Of a stretch of 64,000 nt of DNA, positions 894 through 39,800 are shown piece by piece. The first letter of the stretch is position 1, and each line of letters begins with the position of its first letter. Under the pieces are notes generated by a model. It was not told the origin of the DNA. It saw only the letters and a program-made list of their open reading frames with translations, and did not search any database. Made by a program: the position numbers and the translations under genes. The stretch is from positions 463,113 to 527,112 of the IMG/VR virus record IMGVR_UViG_3300005613_000001; one strand, 5' to 3'.

Positions 894-928
894 AAAGCCG
901 CCTCAATTTTTTGGGGCGGCTTTTTTTT
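894..928. terminator. Bidirectional intrinsic terminator between convergent genes
   Basis: AAAGCCGCC...GGCGGCTTTTTTTT hairpin, A-run on the left and T8 on the right. Confidence 0.85.
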
Positions 929-1952
929 ATCGACTCAAAATGTGTAGGAATTCCTGAGTAGAAGTTCCTTTGTAGTCCCTTTTGCTGTCCGCTTTAAATC
1001 GTGAATAATCCTTTTCACGCATGTCATACTTGCCGTATTTCTCCATTATCTTCTGGATTTCTTCAAATGATAGCAAACCTTCATTGTTGTAACTCAAGAA
1101 GATGTAGTTGAACTTGGCGGCGCTGATTATCTCATCTAGAGATTCGGGCACAGTTTTCTTGGAACAATATGTTGACCGCTCATATTCCCGCAACCCTGTC
1201 TTCCCTCTCGGTAAAAATTCATCATATTTTGCAATCGTATTGAGCAAATGATAGTTAGCACCGTAATCACGTTGGTTATATGGGGGGTCCAGGTAGAGAA
1301 TTCCGCCTTCAATATGATGAATTAACTCGTTGGCATCCTGGTTGTAGGCTATGTTGCTGCCATCGTTAATGGTAAATTCCGGCGCATGCAACTGCATTGT
1401 GCGTATCGCTGTCTTTTTGAACTTCTTTAGGAATGCCCCATAGACAGAAGCAGTGTTGGCAACGCAATCTGCCGCCTCTAATAATGAACATAAGTAGAAG
1501 TAATATTCGTTATCGTTGATTGCGCCGCTGGACAACCATCTTTCTATTTCCATTCTAATAGCATCAATCTTTTTGCCATTCTCATCACTGAAATACATCC
1601 TTTCCGATCCACCAACGCAATAGTTGTTGAAGATAAACCCCTCTACTCCTGGTAGTTCGTTTAAATATTTGAGGCGGTCTACATGTGGAAAATGTTGGTT
1701 GTTGCGGATATAGTTGCGGCAGAAGACATAACTGTAATACTCAATATCGTTAGCAATGACGGATTGAACGTGGGGTTTGAAAAATCTCCCTACGATTCCC
1801 GTACCTGCAAACAGGTCACAGAATACTTGTTGTTCTAAATCTGGTACAGTCTCTTTAATTGTCTGATGAATAAAATCTAAAAGTCTGTATTTAGAACCAA
1901 TATAGTTAATCTGACATTTCGGTTTCATTAAAATTAGCTGGCAACTTAACAT
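927..1952 (-). CDS. Dam/FokI-like (D12 class) N6-adenine DNA methyltransferase
   Basis: NYIGSK, DLFAGTG (SAM binding), ANDIEYYS, LYLDPPYN catalytic motif; true start may be MKPK near 1928. Confidence 0.9.
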   Translation of the reverse strand: MLSCQLILMKPKCQINYIGSKYRLLDFIHQTIKETVPDLEQQVFCDLFAGTGIVGRFFKPHVQSVIANDIEYYSYVFCRNYIRNNQHFPHVDRLKYLNELPGVEGFIFNNYCVGGSERMYFSDENGKKIDAIRMEIERWLSSGAINDNEYYFYLCSLLEAADCVANTASVYGAFLKKFKKTAIRTMQLHAPEFTINDGSNIAYNQDANELIHHIEGGILYLDPPYNQRDYGANYHLLNTIAKYDEFLPRGKTGLREYERSTYCSKKTVPESLDEIISAAKFNYIFLSYNNEGLLSFEEIQKIMEKYGKYDMREKDYSRFKADSKRDYKGTSTQEFLHILSR

Positions 1953-3057
1953 TCTCTAAAGTCTTTTGGGTAAAGACATATCTCCCACCTGTTTTAAAGC
2001 CCAACTCCTCCCAATCAATTTGGTTGAGTTTGTCTCTCATCATCTCTAGACGCATGGGTATGGTTGGGAATATCGCCAAAATAGAGCCATCATAGTTTTT
2101 ACAAGGGTGTAGAAAGAAAGGATTCTTCGCCCTTGTCTTGCAATTGACATATATTCTGGGCTCATCACTCTTATGGCACTCTCTGCCCCACTTCCACCAA
2201 TCCGCCTCTTTAAATTTCTTAACCCTTCTATTTAAGAGGCGGTCTTTGTGTTGCATGAGGTAGTCATTTTCCACATTGTAGTACATTCTCTTCAGCTTAT
2301 TGGTCGTCCGCGTGTAGGAACAAACGAATTCCTCATTCCCATCTGGATGCTCAAACACTTCATCGAGACCACTAACTGCTCCTACTTTAACAAAGAACAA
2401 ATCTTTAAAATCTAAGGAGTAATCTTTCTTAGTGAAACATATCTGCCCATTCATGCAGACAAAGTTTCTTTCCCCTTTAGTAGTGATGGTCTTTCTGGTG
2501 AGATTATCTTTCTCATACCGCCAAACTGCGCATGTGGGCGAGAAGCCTTTGAATATCTGTTTGTCTCCTAAGTCAAAAAAATGGGTTATTGTTCCTTGAT
2601 CCCATAGAAGTTGATTCAATTTAAAGCTGGAAGTGGCTTTGATGAAATCTCGGGGCGTAATGAAGATGATCTCCCCCTGAGCTTCCAAATGCCGAAAACA
2701 CTTCTCAATAAAAAACAAATATAAATTGGCTCTTTTATCAAACAAATCAAACCGCAATTTGTTTTTGGTGCCTTCTTGTATGTTTTTAAAAGCAACATAG
2801 GGTGGGTTACCCATAATAGTGACGAATTTGTTTTCTATTGAATAATCAAAAAAATCCATACAAAGACAATCATCAGGGCACAACTCTTTGTCCAATTCAA
2901 TACAAGCGCTAGGTTCAAGGAGTGATAAGAAATCTCCCTCTCCCGCACTGGGCTCTAATGCTGTGCCATGATTCCGCCTCAAATGATTCATCTTCCCTAC
3001 AATTTTTTGAGGCGTGAATATTTGACCTAGTTGTTCAACATTTCTGTGGATATCCAT
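1906..3057 (-). CDS. Eco57I/TaqI-like (gamma class) N6-adenine DNA methyltransferase
   Basis: QIFTP, LEPSAGEGDF, GNPPY, NLYLFFIEKC, IFITP motifs in gamma order. Confidence 0.88.
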   Translation of the reverse strand: MDIHRNVEQLGQIFTPQKIVGKMNHLRRNHGTALEPSAGEGDFLSLLEPSACIELDKELCPDDCLCMDFFDYSIENKFVTIMGNPPYVAFKNIQEGTKNKLRFDLFDKRANLYLFFIEKCFRHLEAQGEIIFITPRDFIKATSSFKLNQLLWDQGTITHFFDLGDKQIFKGFSPTCAVWRYEKDNLTRKTITTKGERNFVCMNGQICFTKKDYSLDFKDLFFVKVGAVSGLDEVFEHPDGNEEFVCSYTRTTNKLKRMYYNVENDYLMQHKDRLLNRRVKKFKEADWWKWGRECHKSDEPRIYVNCKTRAKNPFFLHPCKNYDGSILAIFPTIPMRLEMMRDKLNQIDWEELGFKTGGRYVFTQKTLENVKLPANFNETEMSD

Positions 3058-3946
3058 TTTCGATTAGAAGATTTGCCATTCGCACATAATCCATATTAAT
3101 ATCAAATCCATAGGCAGTCATTCCCAAGCTTTTAGCAGCGTATAACTCACCGCCAGTACCAGCGAAAGGAACAACAACAATCCCATCTTCAGGTGGTTTT
3201 GATGCCAAGAGCAGCTTAGTGCTTAATTCCAAAGGTTTTTGTGTGGGGTGGGTAACAATTTCATGTTTATCATGTTCTTTCTTTTTCATAGATGCGAAAA
3301 TATTATCACAATCTTTGCAATAAAAGAACCTTTCTACACGGCCCGCTCCACCGGCTAGGGCTGGAATTTTAAATACATCTCTTGGCAAAGCACCCTTATC
3401 ATGTGCTTTGTATATAGTTGTTTTCCCTTTTGAGGAAAACCGACCCTCTGTATCTTTTCTTTCTTTTCCTGCTGCGTTTTTCAAAAAGGTTGGGGTATAG
3501 GGTTCTCTTACATCATCTAAATTAAAGATTCGATTTTCGTCAGTCTTCCAAATTGCCAGCACAGATTCATGGCTTCGTTGCCAGAATTTATTTGTTGCTG
3601 AATTCTTATTAGTGTAATGCCAAACTAACCACCTACAGGGGTAGTCTATAGTGACAAATAAATGGGCGAGTATTTCAGAAAAGCCATAAATATAAGTTGT
3701 GCCTGAGGGTTTTAAAACCCGCATGGAATGGTGTATCCATTCTTGAGCCCATTCCACATATTCTTCAATCTCCACTTTGCATGTGTTATTCCCGAAATCC
3801 TTTCCAATGTTATACGGAGGATCAATTAAAACGATATCAGAATATTCTCTGGGTAGGTTTCTAAGACCCAAAGTGGCATCCAATAATGTCACTCTATTTG
3901 GAAAGAAATGATTTTTGACTATGCACATATTATTGAGGGCTCCCAA
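3035..3946 (-). CDS. Beta-class N4-C/N6-A DNA methyltransferase
   Basis: IDPPYNIG, HPTQKP, VVVPFAGTG; insert CKDC...H..H before HPTQKP. Confidence 0.9.
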   Translation of the reverse strand: MGALNNMCIVKNHFFPNRVTLLDATLGLRNLPREYSDIVLIDPPYNIGKDFGNNTCKVEIEEYVEWAQEWIHHSMRVLKPSGTTYIYGFSEILAHLFVTIDYPCRWLVWHYTNKNSATNKFWQRSHESVLAIWKTDENRIFNLDDVREPYTPTFLKNAAGKERKDTEGRFSSKGKTTIYKAHDKGALPRDVFKIPALAGGAGRVERFFYCKDCDNIFASMKKKEHDKHEIVTHPTQKPLELSTKLLLASKPPEDGIVVVPFAGTGGELYAAKSLGMTAYGFDINMDYVRMANLLIENGYPQKC

Positions 3947-4837: not shown

Positions 4838-5857
4838 ATGCCTGTAGATTTTGATACATTTGTTGATTGGGCCGAAAGCCGCTTCGGAGATATAATTGTC
4901 TCATATCCCGAAGTTAAAATCAATTCAATATTTAAAGACAATGACCAAGATCATAAACTCTGGTGTAATCCCGATGGCGGAAAAGACAATATTGAACTAG
5001 GCGTCTACCATTGCTGGAAAACAGGGGAAACAGGCACGCTCGCGGGACTTGTTATGGAAGTGGATGGCTGCGCCTTTGAAGATGCAGTTGATATCCTCGG
5101 CGGTGATACGCCACTCACGGAACTCCAAGGGAAAATAGAAGATTTCTTCGATAACCTACAAACAAAAGAGGCGGCAGAAACCGAAGAGTCTGTTGATCTA
5201 AAGCTACCTCATGACACATATGCTATTGATGAATTGCCGCCCTGGAATCCATATCGCCAAAGAGCAGAAATTTATCTTAGAAATAGAAAAATCCCTACCA
5301 CTAATCTAATGGTCTGCACAGAAGGGATCTACAGGAATAGAATTGTTATCCCGTATTATGACGAAAAAGGGAAATTAATCTATTTCAACTGCCGGGCATT
5401 AAATGATAAACAAATACCCAAATACCGTGGACCTGAGAAAGATTTGGGAATCGGGAAGGGCGATGTTATTTTCATGCCCAAATGGCCCCCTAAAGGCGAG
5501 AAATTATATATTACAGAGGGCGAATTCGATGCTCTATCACTCTTTTATTCAGAGCTTTATTCAGCAGCTATGGGCGGTAAAAATCTCTCCGCAAAGCAAA
5601 TTCAACTACTAAAGGATTATATCCCTGTTATCACGGTTGATAATGACGAGGCGGGCAGATTAGCTTTGCTCACCATAGGAGATTACCTACTAGAACAAGG
5701 ATTTGAAGTTTATTACGTCCGACCACCCCAAGGATTTAAAGATTGGAATGCGTTATTTGAGGAATATGACGCCCAAATTATAAAAGGCTATATCTCTACA
5801 AATGAGAAGCTCTACACCGAAAACACCAGTGTAGAGCTTCTTGAAAAGAGCTTGTGA
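4838..5857 (+). CDS. dnaG: DNA primase (phage TOPRIM type)
   Basis: YHCWKTG zinc-ribbon remnant, YLRNRKI, RIVIPYY, FNCR, PKY, ITEGEFDAL, DND TOPRIM motifs. Confidence 0.9.
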   Translation: MPVDFDTFVDWAESRFGDIIVSYPEVKINSIFKDNDQDHKLWCNPDGGKDNIELGVYHCWKTGETGTLAGLVMEVDGCAFEDAVDILGGDTPLTELQGKIEDFFDNLQTKEAAETEESVDLKLPHDTYAIDELPPWNPYRQRAEIYLRNRKIPTTNLMVCTEGIYRNRIVIPYYDEKGKLIYFNCRALNDKQIPKYRGPEKDLGIGKGDVIFMPKWPPKGEKLYITEGEFDALSLFYSELYSAAMGGKNLSAKQIQLLKDYIPVITVDNDEAGRLALLTIGDYLLEQGFEVYYVRPPQGFKDWNALFEEYDAQIIKGYISTNEKLYTENTSVELLEKSL

Positions 5858-5947
5858 ATAAAACTCGCTTTCTCCAGAACACTCTGGATGAGCGTGCAAC
5901 GATTTATTCTTTACTTATTTTATATAGAACAAACTGGTTAAATTATT

Positions 5948-6478
5948 ATGTCCCAATTAGAATACTTTAATGGTAAGATCGTTACGATACTTACAACTCC
6001 AATCAATCGCAACTTTAAAGAAGAGGCCGCAGCACTAGGAAAACCCAAGCTATTTCCTGCCAACCTCATGGATCACTTTGTCGGGCGTTTTGAGAGTTAT
6101 GATGCACTAGGGGTGATGTTGGCTCACCCTGATGCCGCTGTAGGTACAAAAGCCTACTATTTTTTGGATAAAATTGTAGGGATTGTTGAAGAACAGGAAT
6201 TAAATCCTGACGATCCCCAGGAAGCTGAATTAATTGAAAAATACAAGGCATTAAAGCAAACACCGCCTCAAGATAAGGTGTATTGCCCCAAAGGACATGC
6301 ACTAGATATACCACCTAATATCAAACCTGGATCACTTGTAGCTTGCCCTAAATGTCAAACTCAATTCCAATTGCCTGACGATAATCCGCCTCAAGATAAA
6401 CCCGCCCCAATAAATCAATCCAACTTTGTGGATATTGATGGGATGTCCAAACTAGCAGAAGAAGCTAAATCAAAATAA
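5948..6478 (+). CDS. Sm/Hfq-like fold candidate with C-terminal zinc ribbon
   Basis: GKIVTILT...GRFESYDALGVML...YYFLDKIVGIVE resembles Sm1/Sm2 spacing; CPKGH...CPKC. Confidence 0.45.
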   Translation: MSQLEYFNGKIVTILTTPINRNFKEEAAALGKPKLFPANLMDHFVGRFESYDALGVMLAHPDAAVGTKAYYFLDKIVGIVEEQELNPDDPQEAELIEKYKALKQTPPQDKVYCPKGHALDIPPNIKPGSLVACPKCQTQFQLPDDNPPQDKPAPINQSNFVDIDGMSKLAEEAKSK

Positions 6479-7573
6479 ATCATCTAAATCATCAAAATGA
6501 TCGTCGTCGGTGGGTGTAGATATAAGCGTATCAATATCACCGGGTTCAGGTGGTGGTGGTATAAACTTTGAAGGTTCAAAAATCTCTGGACCTTCTTTTT
6601 TCTTTGTAGTCTTTTTCTTCGTAGTCTTTTTCTTCTTCTTTTTAGCAGCCGCCGCCTTATCTTCCGCAGAGCGTAATTTAATTGTCATCGGTTTCTTTTT
6701 CTTTGGCGTTGACGTTGGTTTAGATTTTGATTTGGGTTCTGGTTTGGGTTCTGGAGGTTCTGGTTTGGGTTCTGGAGGTTCTGGTTTGGGTTCTGGAGGT
6801 TCTGGTTTGGGTTCTGGAGGTTCTGGTTTGGGTTCTGGTTTGGGATATTGTATGGCTGGTCGTGGGGGTTTACGATGTTTGGTAATATAAACAAGTATAT
6901 CATCACCTTCAACCCCTGCTTCTTTAGCATCAACTATCCACTTCTCCGCTTCAGAAGGCGTCAATTTCATTTTTATCAAACTATCATATACATCTTTCTC
7001 TGCTCCCTCAAATGATGCTCTGGAAGGCTTTGGAGGCTTCTTTTCTTTTTTCTCTTCTTGTGCTTGTGGAATTTTCCCTGCCCGAGTAATAGCAGCATCT
7101 AAATTCCTTCTAAACAGCCTTTTCATGGTGTCTGCAAATTGATTAAGTGCAGCCCCAATGTTATCATTGCCCAATTCATTTTCTAATTGCAGATAAGCAT
7201 TATGGGTATCTTTATAAACTCCCAGACTTGCATGTTCGAGTCCTAGTTTTTTCTTAATAGCTTGCCACCAGCGAGGAGACTCATATTCCGTGCCCGTCTG
7301 TGGGGATTCCCCCGTAGACCAGTTGCGCATCCGATCTCCTGTCGCTTGCATTTTGTCCCCTGCCCTCCATAACCAGTGAGCCAAACCAGAGCCCTTCCCA
7401 GGTTGATTTTGCATTATTTGGGTGTATAAAGAAGCAACCATTCTATCAATTTGTGCATCAATAGAAGGCAAAAGATCACTCATGATTTGATCTTTTGTTA
7501 CACCGGCTTCCAGTTCGTCAGCCTCAATTAATTTTTGGGGATTTGCAAATATTTCATTAAGTGGGAAGTCCAT
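6470..7573 (-). CDS. Low-complexity Pro/Lys-rich protein, possibly a virion internal protein
   Basis: (PEPKPEP)n, KKKKKKTTKKKTTKKK, acidic C-terminus; no transmembrane segment. Confidence 0.6.
   Translation of the reverse strand: MDFPLNEIFANPQKLIEADELEAGVTKDQIMSDLLPSIDAQIDRMVASLYTQIMQNQPGKGSGLAHWLWRAGDKMQATGDRMRNWSTGESPQTGTEYESPRWWQAIKKKLGLEHASLGVYKDTHNAYLQLENELGNDNIGAALNQFADTMKRLFRRNLDAAITRAGKIPQAQEEKKEKKPPKPSRASFEGAEKDVYDSLIKMKLTPSEAEKWIVDAKEAGVEGDDILVYITKHRKPPRPAIQYPKPEPKPEPPEPKPEPPEPKPEPPEPKPEPPEPKPEPKSKSKPTSTPKKKKPMTIKLRSAEDKAAAAKKKKKKTTKKKTTKKKEGPEIFEPSKFIPPPPEPGDIDTLISTPTDDDHFDDLDDLF
6735..6844. repeat. 21-bp coding tandem repeat (4 perfect units plus partial)
   Basis: GGTTCTGGTTTGGGTTCTGGA at 6735, 6756, 6777, 6798; encodes PEPKPEP on the minus strand. 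Confidence 0.95.
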
Positions 7574-8082
7574 TAGATACCTTCTAATACATAGTCACCT
7601 ATTTTTTTCAAGGACATAAGGCAGGCATCAAATCTATGAAATTCACTTGACAAATATTGTAATCTCAATTCTTGAAACCCATTCATACCTGTATCTGTTA
7701 AATCGAAAAAGAATGATTGTCCTCTTCTTCCTACCACCTTATTTTTCTTTTTCATAAGTATATAGGCTGCGGCACCTAAATCTGATACTTCCCCTATTTC
7801 CCCGACATTTGGCTCATGTTCTCTCATTTTCTTGAGAGACATTAAGCATGAGTCAAATTTATGAAAATCGCTTGAGAGATACTCAAAATTTAGATTATCA
7901 AAGTCATCAAGCTCAGACTCATTCATAAGGAAATATACTGCTTGTCCTTTCTTTCCGCCGATTTCGTGCTTGTTCATTAGACAAAAAGCAGCGGCACCTA
8001 AATCGGTTACATACTTTACAACTCGTTTTTCTTCCACTTTCTTTACCTTTCTTATACTGCATTTTCTGCGGCGATCAAACAT
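7573..8082 (-). CDS. Tandem DUF5659-like domain protein
   Basis: Two internal copies: VTDLGAAAFCLM...YLSSDFHKFDSCLMSLKK and VSDLGAAAYILM...YLSSEFHRFDACLMSLKK. Confidence 0.65.
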   Translation of the reverse strand: MFDRRRKCSIRKVKKVEEKRVVKYVTDLGAAAFCLMNKHEIGGKKGQAVYFLMNESELDDFDNLNFEYLSSDFHKFDSCLMSLKKMREHEPNVGEIGEVSDLGAAAYILMKKKNKVVGRRGQSFFFDLTDTGMNGFQELRLQYLSSEFHRFDACLMSLKKIGDYVLEGI

Positions 8083-9059
8083 CCCCTGCTAACGCTATAA
8101 AGCGGATCAGTAGGACGGATTATCTTACCTATCTTAATTGGCAATTTCGCTTGTTTAATAACATCATTAAACAACGCATCAAACCCATTTGGCAAACTTG
8201 ATCCTCCGGCAATTACAATATCAATTGGATCGTCTGTTCTTGCTTTCTTACCTGCACCTGCCAAACCTTCTTTAATGCCTGTAGCTGTCTTTTCCATCAT
8301 AATTCTATATTGAGTTTGAATGGCTCTTTCTACAAGCGTGCTTGGTTCTTTCGTTAAATCAATATTTCTCTTTTCTTTGTTGATAAAAGTAGCCGTTTCA
8401 CTAACCGCCTTGGCAGCCCTTTTGTCAATCCAGTCACCACTATTAACTAATGAAAAACTAAATACTGGCGCACTGTAAATAGAGAAGCACAGATTTACCA
8501 TTCCCGCCCCAAATGAAATTCCAATGCCTGTATATGCCTTTTTCCCAAGCTCAGCATACACCAATGCTAAGCCCTCGTTAATGGGTTGAGCATTTACTGT
8601 GTGTCCGGTTTCATCTTTAAACGCCTTAAAAATAGCCTCTAAGACTTTACCGTGATAATCTGCATCGGTCTCTTCATTAATGGCATTTGCCGGGACGCTG
8701 TAATATAAGGTTTCTTTGTCCTTAGACACATTATCCAACAGGCTGTGGACCATAATTTTTAAAATCTGAAAGGCATGAATCTCACCCGGATTCACACACC
8801 CTTCTTTCATAGGTCTCTTTAGATTTAACGCACTCATCGTATAAGCCATATCTACGGCTTTCTGTCCCAATGCATAAGCAATATCATCTCGCTCAACAAG
8901 AGGAACGCCTGCATTTTTCATCATATTAAATACAAAACGGTTCTCTAATGGGAATTCAAGGAAGGCATTTACTTCCTTCTTATGAACAAAATTCTTATTT
9001 TCATCTCGCTGACAAGTCACTAAATTATACGTGCCCGCGTCAAAACCGATTCCTGACAT
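8052..9059 (-). CDS. Actin-like (ASKHA) ATPase, volactin/ParM-like
   Basis: Phosphate-1 GFDAGTYN, connect-1 INEGLA, phosphate-2 GISFGAGMVN, adenosine IAGGSSLPNGF, connect-2 PLYSVSRG. Confidence 0.85.
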   Translation of the reverse strand: MSGIGFDAGTYNLVTCQRDENKNFVHKKEVNAFLEFPLENRFVFNMMKNAGVPLVERDDIAYALGQKAVDMAYTMSALNLKRPMKEGCVNPGEIHAFQILKIMVHSLLDNVSKDKETLYYSVPANAINEETDADYHGKVLEAIFKAFKDETGHTVNAQPINEGLALVYAELGKKAYTGIGISFGAGMVNLCFSIYSAPVFSFSLVNSGDWIDKRAAKAVSETATFINKEKRNIDLTKEPSTLVERAIQTQYRIMMEKTATGIKEGLAGAGKKARTDDPIDIVIAGGSSLPNGFDALFNDVIKQAKLPIKIGKIIRPTDPLYSVSRGCLIAAENAV

Positions 9060-9071
9060 TGCTTTACCTTT

Positions 9072-9296
9072 CTATTCCTGTACCTGTTCTCCAAATTTAA
9101 TCTTACCCCCCGCCTCAAAATCGGGGACCATAAAGGGCTCATCTTCTTTTTGAGCTATTTTACCCTTGCCATCAACGGAAACCTTTATGTCATTAGTAGT
9201 TATGTTTAAATTAAGGTCTAATGTGATATTAACATCACATTCACCGTCTTTAGTCACAACGGTAACTTTGGGTTTGCCTTTTAATAACTGTACCAT
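9072..9296 (-). CDS. Small hypothetical protein upstream of the actin-like gene
   Basis: 74-aa ORF in operon orientation; ends in TAG in frame with the actin ATG. Confidence 0.65.
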   Translation of the reverse strand: MVQLLKGKPKVTVVTKDGECDVNITLDLNLNITTNDIKVSVDGKGKIAQKEDEPFMVPDFEAGGKIKFGEQVQE

Positions 9297-9344
9297 GCTT
9301 TATATCTATCCTACCAAATACCCATTTAATCTAGTTACTGAGAT

Positions 9345-9506
9345 TTAAAACTCCCAAAAAGGGATGGTTTCGACAGGGATAGGACCATCACCACTACCAC
9401 TAGAACTGGAACTAGAACTGGATGATGTGGGTGGGCGTTGTAGACAATTTTTAATCCAATTAACGAGGCGCTTGAGGGCATCCAATAATTTCTTCAGCCA
9501 TTGCAT
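9345..9506 (-). CDS. 53-aa amphipathic/Ser-rich peptide missing from the ORF track
   Basis: GGAGG SD, then MQWLKKLLDALKRLVNWIKNCLQRPPTSSSSSSSSSGSGDGPIPVETIPFWEF; fills the gap between operon genes. Confidence 0.65.
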   Translation of the reverse strand: MQWLKKLLDALKRLVNWIKNCLQRPPTSSSSSSSSSGSGDGPIPVETIPFWEF

Positions 9507-9507
9507 T

Positions 9508-10503
9508 TTATCCTCCAATGATTTTCAATGGTTGCTTTAACATCTTATCTACTCCTAATAGAATCATGTCTGCTGTAAGTTCTGTCAAACAGGGTTTTGG
9601 ATATGCCTTACTTTTTGGGCAATCGGGCCAATTATAACAAGGTCCACAGTTCCAGTTGCCGTCGTCTCGATGCTTTTGTACAAGTGTCCAATTTTCATAC
9701 CACCTTCCATATACCTTTCCATCGACCATTGTGAAAATACCAACCTGGGGCTTTCCCAAACCCCCGGCCATATGAAAGGTCGCTGTATCGACTGAGACTA
9801 TATAATCCGCTGATGCAACAAAACTCATCCATTTTCTAATAGACCCCATAAGCAAAGGCACTTTTAGATGTTCAAGCATTGGGATTGGACCCGTATGTGT
9901 GTAAAACACATAGCATCCACGCTCCCGTAGTCCGTTTACGACCCCCTCCATTTGATGTGAAATTAAATTTTTAGTCGCCATTGCTGAAATTGGCGAAAAT
10001 AATACTGTTGGTCCACTCTGGGTGCGATGAGACTCAATTTCTCGCTTCGCCTCTATTAATTCTTGTTCACTGAATTGGAAGTGCATATTGTGGTTTTCTA
10101 GTGCAACCCCACAATGGTTAGCCCAAATATCACTTCTATTTTTGCCAGAGAGAGGGGCCATTCTGACTTCATACCGACAGCACGCATTGGTAGTATTATA
10201 AGATGTCAGATAGTCTCCCTGGTCTATTTTTCCAGAATCAACCAGTTCATCTACAAAGGGGTGTCCTTTGATTGCTTGGTGATATATCCCTGGGCAAGCA
10301 AAAACTATCTTAGCATCGGGCATAATCCTTTTAAAATCTTCAAAGATCATTCGGTGAACTAGAATATCCCCTAGTCCCCCATTAGCACGATAAATGAGTA
10401 TAGAATTTCGCTTGTCGCTAAATTCCCTTAAAGACAGATTGGTAGTTCTCTGGCTTTTTTTGACAAGTCTTGATAATAACTTCTTATGCTGAAGTGCTCT
10501 CAT
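9508..10503 (-). CDS. Glycosyltransferase family 9 (heptosyltransferase-like)
   Basis: NGGLGDIL, IVSVDTATFHMAGGLGKPQVGIF, C-terminal CGPC...C...C. Confidence 0.85.
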   Translation of the reverse strand: MRALQHKKLLSRLVKKSQRTTNLSLREFSDKRNSILIYRANGGLGDILVHRMIFEDFKRIMPDAKIVFACPGIYHQAIKGHPFVDELVDSGKIDQGDYLTSYNTTNACCRYEVRMAPLSGKNRSDIWANHCGVALENHNMHFQFSEQELIEAKREIESHRTQSGPTVLFSPISAMATKNLISHQMEGVVNGLRERGCYVFYTHTGPIPMLEHLKVPLLMGSIRKWMSFVASADYIVSVDTATFHMAGGLGKPQVGIFTMVDGKVYGRWYENWTLVQKHRDDGNWNCGPCYNWPDCPKSKAYPKPCLTELTADMILLGVDKMLKQPLKIIGG

Positions 10504-11087
10504 TCAAATAATTTCGCAGGGAATTTAGGAGGCGGCAATTGGTAGAACCGGGGTACTTGTCTTTGGCTGAACGACCCGTGCCCACGCCCTTGACCTTCGC
10601 CTTCGCCTTCTCCTTCACCCTCTCCTTCTACACCAAATGGTTGCCCCCTGCCTTTGCTGGGGTCTGTTGTACCTCTAAAGCTACCGCCTCTTTTTAAATG
10701 TTGTTGGATTGCATGTCCTTGTTCGTGTAACGCTCTGGAATAGGGCAATTCATAAACACGGGGCTCATCTTTTTTAACTTCGAATGGACTATCTTTTTCA
10801 TCAGTGGGGTTTAAATCTTTGGCCCAAACGAGGACACCACCTTCATCATTATCACTGGGTTCATTAATAATAATCCAATATACTTGGAATTTTTCTGGCA
10901 TTTGCTCTGTAGACGGCCAGCCGAACAAGCTATTAATTGCAAACCAAACACCAAAGCCCAAGAATAATGTTGCTGTAATGGTTATCATTTTAATTACCCA
11001 CAGACCTTTAGCTCCAATAACAAACCAAAGGATGAGGGCAGACAACACAATGAAAGCTATAGGAATAGCAGACGTTTCTAAACTCAT
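10500..11087 (-). CDS. Two-TM membrane protein, third gene of the MotA/ExbB-like trio
   Basis: Two N-terminal hydrophobic helices, soluble domain, (GE)n linker; 4-bp overlap with the upstream gene. Confidence 0.7.
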   Translation of the reverse strand: MSLETSAIPIAFIVLSALILWFVIGAKGLWVIKMITITATLFLGFGVWFAINSLFGWPSTEQMPEKFQVYWIIINEPSDNDEGGVLVWAKDLNPTDEKDSPFEVKKDEPRVYELPYSRALHEQGHAIQQHLKRGGSFRGTTDPSKGRGQPFGVEGEGEGEGEGEGQGRGHGSFSQRQVPRFYQLPPPKFPAKLFE

Positions 11088-11734
11088 GGGTCTACCTCCT
11101 CTTCATAATTATTTTCATCAAAACCTCCACCATTAACTGCTTTATCTGCAATGGTCTTGGGCAATTGATTCATACTTACCACGGAGCCCTTTTTGTCTAA
11201 TAAGAACCTGCAAACAGTTTTTTCATCACCATCTTCGTCTAGTGTAACCTTTTTTATAGCCACGGTTTTGAGTGTTGGATTAATTTTATCAATCTGGACG
11301 GTAACCTCAGTAGGTTTATTGGGAGTTCGCTTCGCATACATGTGTACGTTCATTACATACTCACCAGGGATAATACCTCGAATCGTTATAATTTCCCTAT
11401 TTTCGTTATATTTAATTGTCTCACCATCAGGAGTCTTAAAAGTATCATTGCTATGCCCTAAATCGTCACGATCTAAGTGCATTAGTCCATCTTCCCGCCT
11501 CCTAAAGAACACAAGATGGTCAGCGGGGTCTTGCAAATAAGAATCTACATCATTATTTAACTCATTATCCCAAGTGGTTGTAATAACAAACTCAGCTTTG
11601 GCTTCAGAGGCATTATCCAGTTTTGCTTCTGGATTAATTAAAATGTAAGCTATGAAGAATAACGCTACAAATCCCAATAGCGCATTGAATAGCAAATCTA
11701 AGAAGGCTGTATTAGCCCCATAATATTGTCTCAT
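11084..11734 (-). CDS. MotB/ExbD-like single-TM protein with DUF2135/YfaP-like periplasmic domain
   Basis: FLDLLFNALLGFVALFFIA (TM with conserved Asp); W...DVD...P...LDRDD.G...E.I...G.Y...V.MY beta-sandwich pattern. Confidence 0.7.
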   Translation of the reverse strand: MRQYYGANTAFLDLLFNALLGFVALFFIAYILINPEAKLDNASEAKAEFVITTTWDNELNNDVDSYLQDPADHLVFFRRREDGLMHLDRDDLGHSNDTFKTPDGETIKYNENREIITIRGIIPGEYVMNVHMYAKRTPNKPTEVTVQIDKINPTLKTVAIKKVTLDEDGDEKTVCRFLLDKKGSVVSMNQLPKTIADKAVNGGGFDENNYEEEVDP

Positions 11735-12315
11735 TAGATGTCCTTTTTGACTAAATTTAGTCCTTGAGCTAGATTAAAATACTGGATTTTAAGGAGTTGA
11801 GAACAAATTAAACCGATAAGAGTAGTATAGAGGGCTGTAGACATACCTCCACTCATGCTGCTTAACAAATCCTGTACGGACGTGATATCACTTACATCTA
11901 AGGTGCTAAATCCAACGAGCATTAAAATAAAACCACTTACTGTTCCAATCATACCTATATTGACACACATTTCACTTGAAAACCAACCAATTTCTTCCAA
12001 CCTAGATAGCTTCTCAACTTCATCTTCCCACTTTTTTCGTCTTACTTGTTGTCTTTTTCTTTGCTTTGGAGGAAGTGAAGCTTGCGGCCCAGGTCGCGGC
12101 GGCACATCCATATTCAGCACATTACTTAATTTGAATGTTTTCAATCCACACCAAGCTGAGACATATACAAATATCCCAAAAATAACAAAACTAAGTTTGG
12201 TTAAATCTCTTTCCCAAACCTTTTGAAAAGCATCCATATAAAAGGCTGCTACCACTCCCACAAGCACTAAACCGATTACAAGCCACCATTTTAAAAATAA
12301 TTTGTGTTTAATCAT
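11734..12315 (-). CDS. MotA/TolQ/ExbB proton channel family protein
   Basis: IGMIGTVSGF and GGMSTALYTTLIGL signatures; four hydrophobic segments. Confidence 0.88.
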   Translation of the reverse strand: MIKHKLFLKWWLVIGLVLVGVVAAFYMDAFQKVWERDLTKLSFVIFGIFVYVSAWCGLKTFKLSNVLNMDVPPRPGPQASLPPKQRKRQQVRRKKWEDEVEKLSRLEEIGWFSSEMCVNIGMIGTVSGFILMLVGFSTLDVSDITSVQDLLSSMSGGMSTALYTTLIGLICSQLLKIQYFNLAQGLNLVKKDI

Positions 12316-12409: not shown

Positions 12410-13021
12410 TTAGCTGTTGCAGCTTGAACGAATGGACAGAAGAACGGCAACATCGGCGTCAGCGGCACCAGATTCACTGTTTGCAACCTGAATCTTGGAG
12501 ACAGCCAAATCACCATTGTTGAAGATCTGCGTATCGGCAGCAGCCAACGTAAAGGTTGCTGTGGTTAGACCATTCAAGCGAACCTGAACAGAACCAGAAC
12601 CATTGTTGGTAATCTGCGTGAACACAGCGGCGGAACCGTATGTGGTCACAACATCTACCTCGTTGTCCGCAAAAGTAGTACCCGCAGTGGCGGAAATCGT
12701 GGTTGCAGCGGGATATGTATTCTCGCCAGCAACGTCAGAATAAACACTACCATCATCACTTACCACTTCAACAATTGCATCTTCAAGAGAGCACTGTGGG
12801 TAAGCAAATCTCTTCCAATAATTACAATCCGTAAATGTCTCCCCGTCAGACAACTTACGATTAATTAAATTTGGACCCATAACATAAACTTGACGTTGCT
12901 TAGAAGGATCAATCTGATCTCCAAGCCCTTGACCCGTAACGGCACCGGCTGATGCGGTGGAGGGGTCTTTGTCCAAAAGGCCCTGTTCAACGTTGTTCAA
13001 CGCAACTCTAAATACGCTCAT
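12410..13021 (-). CDS. Probable abundant virion structural protein
   Basis: Strong GAGGAG SD, own terminator, Ala/Thr/Gly-rich beta-type composition. Confidence 0.5.
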   Translation of the reverse strand: MSVFRVALNNVEQGLLDKDPSTASAGAVTGQGLGDQIDPSKQRQVYVMGPNLINRKLSDGETFTDCNYWKRFAYPQCSLEDAIVEVVSDDGSVYSDVAGENTYPAATTISATAGTTFADNEVDVVTTYGSAAVFTQITNNGSGSVQVRLNGLTTATFTLAAADTQIFNNGDLAVSKIQVANSESGAADADVAVLLSIRSSCNS

Positions 13022-13089
13022 ACCTAACTCCTCAAATATGAATATACAGTATGACTCTCAATCTTCAAAAGTATATATGCAGCTATTAA

Positions 13090-13698
13090 CTATTTTAGAT
13101 CCAAGATGTCCCCATTAAACATCTTTTCATAAAGAGAAGTGCCTAAACCAGTGGGTACTAAACTAGTCTTAATACCTTTTGAGGCGGCAAGATAAAGCGG
13201 TCCACACTCAACGCCTATTACCCAACCCGCATTTAGAACATCAGTAGTGATTTCTGGCTCAAACCCCTGTTTTGCAGCCATTTCGATGACCGCCTCTTTT
13301 TGGAAATAGGACATAGATTTGACAGGATGTAAACCTTCAGGGCATATTGCGCACTTGGCTGTGGGATCATGATGGGGAACATCTACCCGTTCGCAAGCAA
13401 TATTGGAATCATCTAATAAACCGATAATAGGATGTGTTCGCATATTAAATTTCAAGGGTTTAATTAAGGCAAAATCATTCTTTTTTTGGGTCATTTTAGA
13501 GTGACCAAACACCCTTGGATTATTAAACCAGCTTACAAGTTCATCTTTACAGCAAATAAAAATTTCAACACCATTTAATTCTCGTTCAAGAGTCGGTAGT
13601 AAACAATTTAATTGTACCACATATTCGGAAGACTCCCCTAAATACGATATACAAATCCTATCTTTTATTTTTGCATATATAGGTAAAGGCATTCCCAT
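13090..13698 (-). CDS. Degenerate GT9/GT-B-like protein
   Basis: CISYLGE N-terminal strand; AGWVIGVECGPLYLAASKGIKT resembles the GT9 xDSGPxHxAAA motif. Confidence 0.5.
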   Translation of the reverse strand: MGMPLPIYAKIKDRICISYLGESSEYVVQLNCLLPTLERELNGVEIFICCKDELVSWFNNPRVFGHSKMTQKKNDFALIKPLKFNMRTHPIIGLLDDSNIACERVDVPHHDPTAKCAICPEGLHPVKSMSYFQKEAVIEMAAKQGFEPEITTDVLNAGWVIGVECGPLYLAASKGIKTSLVPTGLGTSLYEKMFNGDILDLK

Positions 13699-36872: not shown

Positions 36873-39800
36873 TTAGTAAGGTCTAGTGGATTGGCCGAAT
36901 CTACCCTGTCGTCCTGGGCTCGCTGCGGCAAGTCCAACATTTAGTGCTGGGTACTTAGCGGGGGCAATAGGTTTTGAGGAGCCTGGAGAAGCATCGCCCA
37001 TAGAATTATCTTCATAAGGTATAATCTCGGACCCTTCGCCCATAATGCTAACCATTTCTATTAAGTGAGCATTCATTGCTGTTAAAAGGTCAACATTTTT
37101 CTTTAAATGTGTAACCATTTCACTTAATTCTTCGCCTGCTACCTTTGTAGTGGTAGGTTCGCCGCCAGCTTGTTCTTTCTTGATTTCATCATGAACTTCT
37201 GGCAATGCTGTAGTAGCAACTGGGGCTGCCTCACCCATCAAGGCTGTAGTAGCTGTAGCTGCGGCACCTGTGAAGTCACCGCTTAACAATTTACCACCCG
37301 CCTCTGTAAGTCCTCCCATAACTCCGAGAGGATCATCAATTAATCTACCACCTACAGTTTTTAATGTTTCATAAGATTTAGAAACGAAACCTTTTGCTGT
37401 TTCGCCTAATCCTTTGATTGTATCCATAGGATTCGTAGCAAAATTAATTGCAGCACCTTTTATCTTATCAAATGCACCACCAAGGAAGCCCCCAACCTTC
37501 TTTACAGTCTCTAAAGGATTCATAGCCATATTGGTTATGTTTTTGAAAGACTTACCAATAAAGCCGGTAACGCCATCCAACACGCCTCGGAACGGACCAT
37601 CCCCTTCAGCCTTTATTCCTTTTAGAGCTTCATTAGGTATAACCGCTTCCCCTTCATGCAAAACACCAAGACCAGTTTTTGTGATTTCTCTACTTCCTTC
37701 TTTAAACCAATTAAATGGATTTAAAGCTGAACCAACGGCTTTCACGCCACCCCAAGCTGCTTTTGCTGTTCCCGTAACCGCACCAACACCTGTTTCTAAA
37801 GCCCCACCTGCAATTTTACCTGCACCTTGAAGCAAATCGCCCTTAAGCATGTCACCAACACCACCGGCCATTCCTCCAAGTCCGTGCATTACGCCTGGAC
37901 CCTCTGTTAGCATAGTGTTCATTTGCTCGCCAGCAGTTTCTCCATATCCTTTAGAGGCGTCAGCGGCAGCACCACCAAATAAATTCTTAACCCAAGCAGG
38001 TATTGCATCAATAAGAGCACCAATGGTGTGATCCCAAAGCCAAGTGCCTAAATTAGCAAGACCTTGTGTAACTGAAGTGAATAGCCAAACTGGGAAATCA
38101 AGGAATACACTTTTCATTCCTCCAAGTAATGACTGTCCGAGCCAAATTGGGAAATCAATAAGCGTAGCCTTTAATCCGCTTAGCAAACTACTACCAAGCC
38201 AAATTGGGAAATCAATAAGTGTAGCCTTTAATCCGCTTAGCAAACTACTACCAAGCCAAATTGGGAAATCAACAAACACTGCCTGCAACCCGTTTAAGAA
38301 ATAGCCTCCCAATATCTTAGGAATTTCCCAGAAGACCGCTTTTATGGTGCCTCCAAGCGAAGTGAAAATGCCACCAACTAAGCTAACAAATCCATCCCAA
38401 ATTCTTTTGAATCCTTCTTTGATTTTATCCCAATCAAATGTTAATATTCCTGTTAAAATGTGTACGAATCCAGCAATAGAATTTACTACGCCTCCAATAA
38501 TTTTACCAATACCCATAATGGCTGGTTTGAGCAGGGTAACAATTACTTTAACAACAACCCCAATAGTGTTAATTAGGAATTTTGCTGCCAAACCAAGCCC
38601 TTGTATTCCCACTTGCAATGGTACAAGTGCCGCGCTTGCAACCCAACCGACTACTGTTCCAAGTGGTTTTAATACTGTACCGATTAACCATCCAATTTGC
38701 TTAGCCACCCACCCAATAGCTCCTACAATGCCGCCCAATGCTGTTCCTAACATTCCAAAGAATCCAGAAACACTAGCTAATCCTGATTTAACATCTAACA
38801 ACGGCCCAAAGAACGGTTGGAAAACGGTCATCAAGGTATTCTTGATATCACTGAACACACCTTTGAGCATTGCAAAGGTGGCTTCAAATGGTTCAATGAT
38901 TCCCATTATCACACCTTTAATGCTATTCCACCCATCTAACATAGGTTGGAAAATAGGAGCGAAAATACCCTTAGAAAGACTTTCCAAACCACTACTAATG
39001 GCATTCATTAAATACTTTGGCAAATCAACAAATATTTTGCCAAACATATTCAAGAAGAATTGAGGCACATTACCGACCACAGCTATAAGTGATTTGCCGA
39101 TCATGCCAATAACATTTCCAACCATATTTGGCAGAGCTATGATGGCTCGTCCAAATCCTTCTTTAATTGTTTCAAAATCAAAACTAAACAATCCAACCAC
39201 CGTGCTAAACAAACCACCAAGAACGCCACCTATTCCCCCGGCTATTTCACCAATGAGCTTAAATGGTGTCAAAATAGTCTTTAATATAGCCCCAATCGGA
39301 CCTGTAACCTTGTCCGCCATTCCGCCTATACTGGTAAAGATGCCAGCCACAGCCTGATATAATAACTGCGGGAGCTTTAATATCACTGCTGCAAAATACT
39401 TAGGCAATGCGATAATTTGTTTGCCAATTGCTGGGACGATTGCCACGACACTCTTGTATAGCATTTTTGGAACTGCGAGTAGCATTGTCACCAGCCCATC
39501 ACCCATAGATTTAAAATCAAGAGTAAAGAGCCCCTTAATGACTTGCCATGCTCCACTAAATGTTGCTTTTATGCCCTCGGCTAGATATTTTAATGGTTTA
39601 ATAATTGCATCAATGCCTGGTGCCCATGACATGAGAAATTTTCTTAGAGGCGACCCAGCATCGGTCATTATTTTATATAGTTCAGCTACACCACCACTAA
39701 CAGCACCAGCAATAGCTCCCATGCCTGTGCCAATAACGGGAACAACACTACCAAGAGCAGCACCAGCCATTGCCCCTGTTCCAGCAGCACCCATGATGCC

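What the first reader, a model, noticed from the sequence alone, without database searches (positions are those of the whole stretch)
7573..9296. Actin-like ATPase operon with volactin-type signatures
Seen: a complete actin-fold motif set flanked by a small protein and a tandem DUF5659-like protein. From memory, the motifs GISFGAGM.N, GDWID..AA.A and PLYSV.RG.L.AA match the haloarchaeal volactin family better than ParM/MreB; this needs verification. Established: jumbo phages position DNA with tubulin PhuZ, while phage actins are less studied. Inference: a three-part cytoskeletal or positioning system for replication or virion trafficking.
Basis: partly seen in the sequence, partly recalled or inferred. 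Interest (0 to 1): 0.6.

Follow-up and report, generated by a model that had tools for sequence, protein, structure and literature searches.

The report
Huge-phage volactin-type actin operon
A 527-kb phage carries a tightly packed four-gene operon built around an unusually conserved actin-like ATPase of the volactin family and three dedicated partner proteins; well over a hundred huge-phage contigs share it, so it is probably a phage-made cytoskeleton whose cargo is still unknown.

Summary
Three minus-strand genes lie exactly at 7573-9296. The 335-aa product matches Pfam Volactin over its full length (225 bits against a cut-off of 35), while MreB scores below threshold and ParM, FtsA, actin and Hsp70 do not match. 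The window is the end of a 527-kb tailed-phage record that has no tubulin, MreB or ParM gene.

The actin forms a monophyletic, slowly evolving phage clade (63-76% identity, against 33-48% for neighbouring genes) on at least 145 IMG/VR contigs.

Its neighbours are conserved with it:
- an upstream 74-aa protein with a C-terminal peptide motif, with weak in-silico support for binding the actin;
- a downstream protein made of two copies of a roughly 70-aa domain, DUF5659-like in fold only;
- a fourth gene (6470-7573), probably homologous, encoding a helical domain plus a long PEPK/Lys-rich tail.

In the reverse test, 76 of 77 loci fetched through the tandem protein also carry the actin.

No centromere-like repeats or basic DNA-binding adaptor were found, so a ParMRC-type reading is weak. 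The most likely reading is a dynamic filament system that organises replication or assembly. The function is inferred, not shown. I found no published description.

The parts
9072..9296 (-). g74: a 74-aa protein. It has a conserved N-terminal beta segment (KDGE..LDLNLN), a variable acidic linker and a conserved C-terminal peptide (consensus WAIPDFxxxxKIxFGK; here FMVPDFEAGGKIKFGE).
   Evidence: ORF. Alignment of 52 homologues: A3. Found upstream of the actin in 76 of 85 actin-fetched loci and 72 of 77 tan-fetched loci. No Pfam, PHROG, NCBIfam or Atlas lead. Predicted complex with the actin: weak support.
9062..9072 (-). GAAAGGTAAAG, a ribosome-binding-like motif 2 nt before the actin ATG. It overlaps the last base of the g74 stop codon.
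   Evidence: direct repeat D7, shared with 8038-8059.
8052..9059 (-). Volactin-family actin-fold ATPase, 335 aa.
   Evidence: Pfam PF25216: E 1.7e-66, 225 bits, profile positions 3-321 of 321. AF2 model: pLDDT 94, pTM 0.91. Nearest solved folds are BeeR, MreB, MamK and crenactin. 32% identical to a Halogeometricum family member, E 1e-60. Monophyletic phage clade.
8041..8051 (-). GAAAGGTAAAG, the same ribosome-binding-like motif, 3 nt before GTG 8037.
7573..8037 (-). tan: a 154-aa protein made of two copies of a roughly 70-aa beta-alpha-beta-beta-alpha-alpha domain with a DUF5659-like fold. The longest ORF starts at ATG 8082 (169 aa) and overlaps the actin gene by 31 nt.
   Evidence: AF2 model: pLDDT 89, pTM 0.80. 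No solved structural relative: Foldseek best E 0.1, VIA Z at most 5.1. Atlas DUF5659 cluster: TM 0.73. Single-domain versions of 70-88 aa occur in at least 13 loci. Downstream of the actin on the same strand in all 76 tan-fetched loci that hold an actin.
6470..7573 (-). Probable fourth member, 367 aa. It has an N-terminal helical domain (about residues 27-162), then PEPKPEP repeats, a Lys-rich stretch and an acidic C-terminus. Its ATG overlaps the tan stop codon (TAATG).
   Evidence: BLAST finds no homologue. hhalign of its N-terminal domain against the K/E/P/A-rich family encoded after tan in other loci (A5): probability 88.5%, E 2.7e-6 over 123 columns. No Pfam or PHROG family.

Best explanation
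This is a translationally coupled operon of a 527-kb tailed phage. It encodes a phage-specific branch of the volactin family of actins together with dedicated accessory proteins.

Shown:
- family membership of the ATPase;
- an intact nucleotide-binding motif set, with the family-wide Ser/Met variant of phosphate-2;
- unusually strong sequence conservation;
- strict co-occurrence and fixed gene order with g74 and tan across a large huge-phage clade and into 43%-identity sister lineages.

Inferred:
- The ATPase polymerises with ATP into dynamic filaments in the infected cell, as volactin, MamK, MreB and BeeR do.
- g74 docks on the actin through its conserved C-terminal peptide, while its N-terminal part acts as a variable anchor.
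- tan is a pseudo-dimer (a presumed homodimer in phages with a single-domain version). It binds two equivalent sites, for example as a nucleator, capper or cross-linker.
- The fourth protein supplies a long flexible or rod-like tether.
- Together they position or move something large during infection. The most likely cargo is replicating genomes or the replication/assembly site, in a phage that has no tubulin (PhuZ) gene.
For: Family and fold:
- Pfam Volactin 225 bits; MreB_Mbl 21 bits, below its cut-off; no other ASKHA family matched.
- Profile search of the PDB: MamK 1e-11, MreB 6.5e-9.
- Structural neighbours: BeeR Z 27.8, MreB 26.2, crenactin 24.8; MamK filament TM 0.73-0.75.
- The volactin family separates from MreB on a branch with 100% support, and the phage clade is monophyletic at 99%.

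Constraint:
- Median identity to the window protein is 67% for the actin. It is 47.5% for tan, 48% for p203, 43% for the primase, 42% for GT9 and 37% for g74.
- All phage-clade actins collapse into one 50%-identity cluster.
- An intein and free-standing homing endonucleases target the gene, as they do for highly conserved essential genes.

Linkage:
- Among actin-fetched loci, g74 is present in 76 of 85 and tan in 80 of 85.
- Among tan-fetched loci, 76 of 77 carry the actin upstream on the same strand, and 49 of those actins are absent from the first set.
- A tan homologue also lies next to the actin in L086 (actin 43% identical; hhalign 98.9%) and in L102 (E 1.8e-27).

Operon structure:
- Gaps between genes are 12, 14 and -1 nt, with a shared RBS motif.

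g74-actin complex prediction:
- Verdict: weak support. Score 0.57, best of 3 controls 0.00.
- The mark was reached by 58 of 80 solved complexes and 2 of 110 mismatched pairs. At 0.60 or under it was reached by only 7 of those 80 solved complexes and by both mismatches that passed.
- The runs agree in at least 88% of contacts. The partner's pLDDT is at least 43.

Other:
- Volactin forms dynamic filaments in vivo (PMC10869688).
- G000 has no tubulin, MreB or ParM match.
- In most loci the module lies beside replication genes: primase in 43 of 85, Pol III alpha and a 5'-3' exonuclease in L102, and RNR in L087.
Against: - No experiment exists on any phage member. Polymerisation, partners and cargo are all inferred.
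- Phosphate-2 lacks the Asp and Thr of MreB and MamK. This is shared with haloarchaeal members, but its effect on hydrolysis is unknown.
- The Hsp70 nucleotide-binding domain is structurally only 3-4 Z units behind the best filament-formers.
- The complex prediction is only 'weak support', the partner's fold is uncertain, and no interface was returned.
- tan-actin binding was not tested.
- The fourth gene's homology rests on one hhalign hit at 88.5%.
- The module also borders structural-looking genes and a glycosyltransferase, so genomic context does not single out replication.
Confidence: 0.55

Rival explanations
1. ParMRC/AlpAC-type DNA segregation. The actin pushes or pulls phage genomes through a DNA-binding adaptor (tan or g74) bound to a centromere-like site. 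The purpose would be to partition an episomal, pseudolysogenic megaphage genome or to place replicating copies.
For: - The gene order, with a small adaptor-sized gene immediately next to the actin, resembles parM-parR, alp7A-alp7R and alpA-alpC.
- AlpA links phage DNA to AlpC filaments and is needed for efficient replication (PMC4446434).
- Volactin dynamics resemble ParM (PMC10869688).
- No tyrosine integrase was found in G000.
- Replication genes lie nearby.
- The window's fourth protein has a Lys-rich tail that could bind DNA non-specifically.
Against: - There is no ParM/StbA HMM match. That search also rang in none of the 14 control genomes, so it is weak evidence.
- No iterated repeats occur in the intergenic DNA of the module. 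The only repeats are coding ones.
- tan and g74 are mildly acidic (median pI 6.1 and 5.3) and have no ribbon-helix-helix, HTH or other known DNA-binding fold.
- The intergenic gaps are only 12-48 nt.
Confidence: 0.15
2. Host cell-shape or envelope takeover. The phage actin acts like MreB or volactin on the host envelope, for example to keep or enlarge the cell for a long infection that makes very large virions. It might act together with the neighbouring GT9-family glycosyltransferase.
For: - MreB is among the nearest solved relatives.
- Volactin is a cell-shape determinant (PMC10869688).
- A GT9-like gene lies upstream of g74 in 62 of 85 loci, and also in L086 and L100.
- In L100 the small upstream protein has an N-terminal transmembrane helix and a C-terminal KFG-type motif, which suggests membrane anchoring of filaments in some lineages.
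Against: - The protein starts directly at the phosphate-1 strand and has no N-terminal amphipathic helix, unlike the four MreBs aligned with it.
- Sequence conservation is independent of whatever hosts these diverse contigs have.
- The protein has its own dedicated, phage-only partners, rather than partners resembling the host MreB interactors RodZ or MreC.
- It is only about 16% identical to MreB structures.
Confidence: 0.15
3. Non-filamentous ASKHA ATPase. The protein would be a chaperone-like or regulatory nucleotide switch that works as a monomer or dimer with g74 and tan as clients or co-factors.
For: - The Hsp70 nucleotide-binding domain scores Z 23.4, not far below the best hits.
- In the viral structure library the best hits are Hsp70 homologues.
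- The phosphate-2 motif is deviant.
Against: - There are no Hsp70, FtsA, PilM or sugar-kinase HMM hits at E<0.1.
- There is no substrate-binding or extra domain: 335 aa is a bare actin core.
- The characterised family member polymerises in vivo (PMC10869688).
- The top structural and profile hits are all filament formers.
Confidence: 0.1

Closest known systems
Volactin (VolA, HVO_2015) of Haloferax volcanii; Pfam PF25216
   Same: Same Pfam family over the full length. About 32% identical to a haloarchaeal member, with the shared signatures G[IV]SFGAGM.N, GDWIDK.AA.A and DPLYSV.RG.L.AA. The size and bare actin core are the same.
   Different: This one is encoded by a phage, in a separate monophyletic clade far from the acidic (haloarchaeal-type) sequences in the tree. 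It comes with g74 and tan partners, which are absent within 5 kb of the Halogeometricum and Planctomycetota genes. [quoted passage not shown]
MamK with MamJ (magnetosome chain actin)
   Same: Best profile hit among solved structures (E 1.1e-11), with TM 0.73-0.75 to the MamK filament. Both combine an actin with a repetitive, low-complexity partner that tethers cargo (established knowledge for MamJ).
   Different: Only about 16% identical. NCBIfam MamK scores 27 bits against a cut-off of 400. There are no magnetosome genes. The repetitive partner here is K/E/P-rich and unrelated.
MreB
   Same: Shares the RPMK[DE]G, GD..D and DPL...A.G motifs and the overall fold (Z 26.2).
   Different: Pfam MreB_Mbl scores 21 bits, below its cut-off of 27. 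The two are separated by a long, fully supported branch. The protein has no N-terminal amphipathic helix, a different phosphate-2 motif, an extra N-terminal insert and a shorter IIB region.
AlpC/AlpA of prophage CGP3; ParMRC, Alp7ARC and AlfAB
   Same: A mobile-element-encoded actin co-transcribed with small partner gene(s). AlpAC is needed for efficient phage DNA replication (PMC4446434).
   Different: A different actin family: ParM R1 Z 19.3, Alp7A 18.2, AlfA 17.5, and no StbA HMM hit. There are no centromere repeats and no recognisable DNA-binding adaptor.
PhuZ tubulin spindle of nucleus-forming jumbo phages
   Same: A phage-encoded cytoskeletal polymer in very large phages, and the functional precedent for positioning replication compartments and capsids (PMC7950403, PMC8314001).
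   Different: PhuZ has the tubulin fold, not the actin fold. G000 has no tubulin match. Whether this phage builds any compartment was not tested.
BeeR (Verrucomicrobiota three-stranded tubular actin)
   Same: Best structural match: Z 27.8, 301 residues aligned, rmsd 3.5.
   Different: Only a remote sequence relative: profile E 2e-8, 16% identity. BeeR is a cellular protein of unknown function (PMC11929497).

Membership tests
Volactin family (Pfam PF25216) | Scores above the curated HMM cut-off over the full length of the model | tested here: met
   225.3 bits against a cut-off of 35, covering profile positions 3-321 of 321. The genome-level search gives the same result, and only 1 of 14 control genomes is over the cut-off.
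Volactin family (Pfam PF25216) | Groups with family members and apart from MreB in a tree | tested here: met
   99 family rows separate from 4 MreB rows on a branch with 100% SH-aLRT support. This was a quick ML search under LG+G4.
Volactin family (Pfam PF25216) | Shares signature motifs with a haloarchaeal member | tested here: met
   32% identity over 331 aa, E 1e-60, to a Halogeometricum borinquense protein. The motifs GVSFGAGMTN, GDWIDKQAAQA and DPLYSVARGALVAA are shared. HVO_2015 itself was not available to compare.
Volactin family (Pfam PF25216) | Forms dynamic filaments in vivo and contributes to the rod-to-disk shape transition | not testable with these tools
   Shown only for HVO_2015 (PMC10869688).
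MreB/Mbl | Pfam PF06723 above its cut-off, plus a membrane-targeting element | tested here: not met
   21.4 bits, below the cut-off of 27. No genome-level match at E<=0.01. No N-terminal amphipathic helix.
ParMRC-type segregation system | A ParM/StbA-family actin | tested here: not met
   No PF06406 hit. The genome search also rang in no control genome. ParM structures rank well below MreB and BeeR.
ParMRC-type segregation system | Centromere-like iterated repeats next to the operon | tested here: not met
   Only coding repeats were found in 5800-9600. A k-mer scan of 84 loci found repeats only inside the low-complexity gene downstream.
ParMRC-type segregation system | A small DNA-binding adaptor (a ribbon-helix-helix or HTH dimer) | tested here: inconclusive
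   tan has a beta-alpha-beta-beta-alpha-alpha fold with no DNA-binding relative (Z at most 5.1), and its pI is about 5.6-6.1. Binding was not assayed.
DUF5659 (Pfam PF18903), for the tandem protein | HMM match above the cut-off | tested here: not met
   No hit for the window protein at E<=0.1 or in the genome at E<=10. Only 1 of 15 homologous domains hits, at E 0.009.
DUF5659 (Pfam PF18903), for the tandem protein | Same fold | tested here: met
   Atlas cluster in which 92% of members carry PF18903: TM 0.73 by target, 67 residues aligned, rmsd 2.0 A, to model residues 18-88. A language-model feature hit of 0.82 to a cluster with 37% DUF5659 members is a lead only.
PhuZ/tubulin phage spindle | A tubulin/FtsZ-family GTPase in the genome | tested here: not met
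   No PF00091 match in G000, while 13 of 14 control genomes rang.
Hsp70 / sugar-kinase ASKHA enzymes | HMM match or extra substrate domains | tested here: not met
   No such Pfam hit at E<0.1, and 335 aa is the bare actin core. Structurally, BiP's nucleotide-binding domain scores Z 23.4 and hexokinase 16.8, against 26-28 for MreB and BeeR.

The most novel reading that the evidence does not exclude
The four genes form a complete, self-contained phage actin cytoskeleton: a filament, a peptide-docking anchor, a two-fold symmetric nucleator or cross-linker with a fold not seen in solved structures, and a long tether. It organises megaphage replication or virion assembly inside the cell. It would be an actin-based counterpart of the PhuZ spindle, widespread in a tubulin-less clade of environmental huge phages and maintained under actin-like sequence constraint.
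Probability: 0.35. Interest if true: 0.8.

Novelty: new variant of a known kind. Interest (0 to 1): 0.62.

Why it matters
Phage-built cytoskeletons are so far known mainly from the PhuZ tubulin of nucleus-forming jumbo phages and from a few ParM/AlpC-type actins. Here a different actin family, characterised only once (in a haloarchaeon) and with no solved structure, turns out to be a hallmark gene of a large clade of environmental huge phages.

Three features make it worth following up:
- It is one of the most conserved genes in its neighbourhood.
- It is always accompanied by the same uncharacterised partners.
- It gives a compact set of four small proteins with which to test how phages with half-megabase genomes organise the infected cell.

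It also offers a tractable, non-halophilic route to the biochemistry and structure of volactin-family filaments and of the DUF5659 fold. In addition, database names such as 'disk-shape morphogenesis protein volactin [Planctomycetota bacterium]' on short MAG contigs probably label phage genes.

Tried and rejected
- phmmer of the actin against PDB sequences found nothing at E<=1. Only the family profile reached MamK and MreB.
- NCBIfam has no model that claims the actin: MamK scores 27 bits against a cut-off of 400.
- The listing of cluster members on 20 family representatives gave almost no names or taxa, so the tree could not be labelled by organism. 'Acidic' was used as a crude proxy for haloarchaeal origin.
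- The tan model has no convincing solved relative. A winged-helix or RHH reading was therefore dropped.
- g74 has no Pfam, PHROG, NCBIfam or Atlas lead.
- The search for centromere-like repeats was negative.
- Promoter-like sites are fewer than in shuffled sequence (13 against 20.6), and no terminator-like site lies within 7573-9296. This gives no information on operon boundaries beyond the gene spacing.
- The look-up of sequencing runs listed no run for the 1.7-kb stretch. Read laying was therefore not used, and there is no expression evidence.
- BFVD holds no close viral structural relative.
- Recent capture from a host was considered and rejected. The nearest sequences outside the phage clade are at most 43% identical, and at least three of them (L086, L087 and L102) lie in phage-like contexts. 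The four 'genome' hits lie in MAGs of four unrelated phyla and keep the phage synteny, which points to mis-binned phage contigs.
- The host was not identified.
- No alternative genetic code was needed: table 11 gives 92% coding.
Full report
**What is there**

The window is the last 64 kb of a 527,112-bp IMG/VR virus record (G000:C1:463113-527112; CheckV completeness 100%, linear). Several features identify the record as a tailed huge phage that uses the standard genetic code:
- GC content is 41%.
- It is 92% coding under table 11.
- It carries 59 tRNA genes.
- It encodes a DnaG-type primase and a baseplate wedge protein.

At the reported coordinates three minus-strand ORFs lie head to tail: 9072-9296 (74 aa, 'g74'), 8052-9059 (335 aa) and 7573-8082 (169 aa, 'tan').

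**The actin**

Family assignment by sequence:
- Pfam gives Volactin (PF25216) at E 1.7e-66 and 225 bits, covering profile positions 3-321 of 321.
- The only other hit is MreB_Mbl at 21 bits, below its cut-off of 27. ParM/StbA, FtsA, actin and Hsp70 do not match at E<0.1.
- NCBIfam offers only MamK, at 27 bits against a cut-off of 400.
- No PDB sequence matches by phmmer. A profile of 82 family members reaches MamK (1.1e-11), MreB (6.5e-9), BeeR (2e-8) and FtsA (1e-4).

Structure:
- An AlphaFold model built on that alignment is confident (pLDDT 94, pTM 0.91).
- By Foldseek its nearest solved folds are the MamK filament (TM 0.73/0.75), C. crescentus MreB and BeeR.
- By VIA-align the order is BeeR (Z 27.8, 301 residues, rmsd 3.5), MreB (26.2) and crenactin (24.8). 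Below them come the Hsp70 nucleotide-binding domain (23.4), eukaryotic actin (23.0), ParM R1 (19.3) and hexokinase (16.8).
- Structure alone therefore ranks filament-forming actins first, but only by a few Z units. The sequence evidence decides the family.

Comparison with cellular family members:
- The protein is 32% identical (E 1e-60) to a Halogeometricum borinquense protein.
- It is 33% identical to a protein on a cellular Planctomycetota contig.

Motifs:
- Phosphate-1 is DxGT.
- RPMKEG is present.
- The connect-1 Glu (E162) aligns with the MamK/MreB catalytic Glu.
- GDWID corresponds to MreB's GDE.D.
- The adenosine motif GG is present.
- Phosphate-2 reads S-F-G-A-G-M where MreB and MamK have D-I-G-G/A-G-T. 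Ser182 is invariant in all 82 aligned family sequences.
- There is no N-terminal amphipathic helix.

**A phage clade under strong constraint**

- A search of 5.8 billion proteins found 1267 relatives. The best 120 are all 68-96% identical and all carry PF25216.
- At least 145 IMG/VR contigs (up to 533 kb) encode a relative of 63-76% identity. So does the 595-kb uncultured phage LR756511.1, at 65%.
- In the 50%-identity representative library the whole clade collapses to one full-length cluster plus an intein-bearing one and some fragments. Identity then drops to 43%.
- A maximum-likelihood tree puts the family apart from MreB with 100% support. The phage clade is monophyletic (99%) and has very short internal branches.
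- That clade sits inside a 27-row group whose other sampled members also lie in phage-like contexts. Examples are ribosomal protein S21, an RNR with an intein, ClpP and Pol III alpha.
- Acidic, haloarchaeal-type sequences lie elsewhere in the tree.
- Only four hits came from 185,579 species genomes. They lie in MAGs assigned to four unrelated phyla and keep the phage gene order, so they are probably mis-binned phage contigs.
- Median identity to the window's proteins is 67% for the actin. For the neighbours it is 47.5% (tan), 48% (p203), 43% (primase), 42% (GT9), 37% (g74), 35% (p202) and 33% (zn176).
- The gene is also a target of selfish elements. A LAGLIDADG intein sits inside the phosphate-2 loop in L004, and about 14 family representatives of roughly 700 aa are split at the same place. 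GIY-YIG homing endonuclease genes lie just upstream in several loci.

**The partners**

g74:
- Its homologues share an N-terminal beta segment, a variable acidic linker and a conserved C-terminal peptide, WAIPDFxxxxKIxFGK.
- In the more distant loci L100 and L101 the small upstream protein differs, but again ends in a KFG/RFG motif. In L100 it begins with a transmembrane helix.
- A controlled complex prediction of actin with g74 returned 'weak support': score 0.57, best of 3 controls 0.00.
- The mark was reached by 58 of 80 solved complexes and 2 of 110 mismatched pairs. At 0.60 or under it was reached by only 7 of those 80 solved complexes and by both mismatches that passed.
- The runs agree in at least 88% of contacts, and the partner's pLDDT is at least 43. 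No interface was reported.

tan:
- It consists of two copies of a roughly 70-aa domain. At least 13 loci instead have a single-domain protein of 70-88 aa.
- Its probable start is GTG 8037 (154 aa). This start follows the same GAAAGGTAAAG motif that precedes the actin start.
- The model (pLDDT 89, pTM 0.80) shows beta-alpha-beta-beta-alpha-alpha twice, packed as a pseudo-dimer.
- No solved structure resembles it: Foldseek E is at best 0.1 and VIA Z is at most 5.1.
- An ESM-Atlas cluster in which 92% of members carry DUF5659 aligns at TM 0.73 (67 residues, rmsd 2.0 A).
- The DUF5659 HMM itself does not match. The label 'DUF5659-like' is therefore right for the fold and wrong for family membership. 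DUF5659 has no known function, and the paper library holds no mention of it.

Linkage between tan and the actin:
- A tan homologue also follows the actin in L086 (actin 43% identical; hhalign 98.9%, E 1.8e-17) and in L102 (E 1.8e-27).
- No tan homologue lies within 4-5 kb of the actin in the Planctomycetota locus, the Halogeometricum locus, LR745208.1, L088, L100 or L101.
- In the reverse test, 77 new loci were fetched through tan motifs alone. Of these, 76 hold a volactin-type actin upstream on the same strand; the exception is cut at the contig end.
- Of the same 77 loci, 72 hold g74, and 49 of the 76 actins were not in the first set.

**A fourth gene**

- The gene after tan (6470-7573) starts in a TAATG overlap with the tan stop codon.
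- It encodes a helical N-terminal region, PEPKPEP repeats, a Lys-rich stretch and an acidic tail.
- BLAST finds no homologue. In most related loci the same position holds a 250-950-aa protein rich in K, E, P and A, and 34 unique sequences of these form one BLAST-connected family.
- hhalign matches that family's N-terminal domain to residues 27-162 of the window protein: probability 88.5%, E 2.7e-6, 123 columns.
- I treat it as a probable member.

**What argues about function**

- The genes are packed with gaps of 12, 14 and -1 nt.
- G000 has no tubulin, MreB or ParM match. The ParM search rang in no control genome either, so that absence is weak evidence.
- G000 has no tyrosine integrase and one ParB_N-domain protein, which lies elsewhere in the genome.
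- No iterated intergenic repeats flank the module.
- tan and g74 are mildly acidic.

A ParMRC/AlpAC-type DNA-adaptor mechanism (PMC4446434) is therefore possible but unsupported. Volactin itself forms dynamically unstable cytoplasmic filaments whose tips touch the membrane (PMC10869688). The best-supported reading is a dynamic filament with dedicated regulators and anchors that organises replication or assembly. The cargo is unknown.

**Novelty**

None of the 17 papers that mention volactin were phage studies by title or abstract. Searches combining huge or jumbo phages with actin found no description of this system. The Nature 2020 huge-phage paper mentions only tubulin/PhuZ. The library is incomplete, so prior description cannot be excluded.

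**Limits**

- There is no expression data: none was listed.
- The host is unknown.
- HVO_2015 itself was not compared.
- The tree came from a quick search, and its rows are not labelled by taxon.
- Every mechanistic step is inferred.
- No alternative genetic code and no broken toxin gene were involved.

Noticed in passing
L004:4995-7130: The actin homologue on this contig is 712 aa because a LAGLIDADG intein (Hint, LAGLIDADG_3 and Intein_splicing domains) sits inside the phosphate-2 loop (GIGIS|C...HN|CGAGM). About 14 of the 150 family representatives are roughly 700 aa and split at the same place.
   Followed up: partly
L002:2897-3595, L064:4275-4988 (also L006, L009, L029): Free-standing GIY-YIG/NUMOD3 homing endonuclease genes are inserted between g74 and the actin gene in several related phages.
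   Followed up: partly
L007:6025-6675, L010:6020-7015, L027:6041-6811 and others: In about a third of related loci, an extra gene for a 217-332-aa protein of unknown function lies between the actin and tan. It has no Pfam hit. G000 has no homologue.
   Followed up: partly
window 9345-9506 (-): A 53-aa ORF with a strong GGAGGA ribosome-binding site lies between the GT9-like gene and g74. It has an amphipathic helix, a run of nine Ser and a C-terminal IPFWEF. No homologue was found in 85 related loci.
   Followed up: partly
window 10500-12315 (-): A MotA/ExbB-family protein (11734-12315) is followed by two predicted membrane proteins (11084-11734 and 10500-11087). The same trio occurs in six related loci. 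It could be a phage-encoded proton-channel or stator-like complex.
   Followed up: no
window 9508-10503 and 12410-13698 (-): A GT9-family glycosyltransferase-like gene and two unknown acidic proteins (p203, p202) precede the module in a conserved order (p202-p203-GT9-g74-actin-tan) in most related loci.
   Followed up: partly
window 927-3946 (-) and 56792-57724 (+): Three DNA methyltransferase genes lie in a row (D12 class, Eco57I-like, N6_N4), and a fourth lies further on.
   Followed up: no
window 36873-44837 (-): A single 2654-aa ORF lies next to the baseplate/tail gene block.
   Followed up: no
G000:C1:167265-167425 (outside the window): Among the genome's 59 tRNA genes, two neighbouring ones have anticodons CTA and TTA (suppressor-type). 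Even so, the genome reads as 92% coding under the standard code.
   Followed up: no
L099:3800-4699: In Halogeometricum borinquense the volactin-family gene follows a gene with a CdpA_N domain (the division-ring anchor family). This may be a cellular partner worth checking in haloarchaea.
   Followed up: no
L002-L005: Contigs carrying the phage module are binned into MAGs labelled Chloracidobacterium, Acidimicrobiaceae, Neisseriaceae and Verrucomicrobiales. Each of these MAGs has its own ordinary MreB elsewhere. The contigs are probably phage DNA mis-binned into those MAGs.
   Followed up: partly
L100:3728-3982: In a distant relative, the small protein upstream of the actin has an N-terminal transmembrane helix and ends in ...KPAKFGIDD. 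This resembles the C-terminal motif of g74 and hints that the motif docks on the actin while the N-terminus sets the anchor.
   Followed up: no
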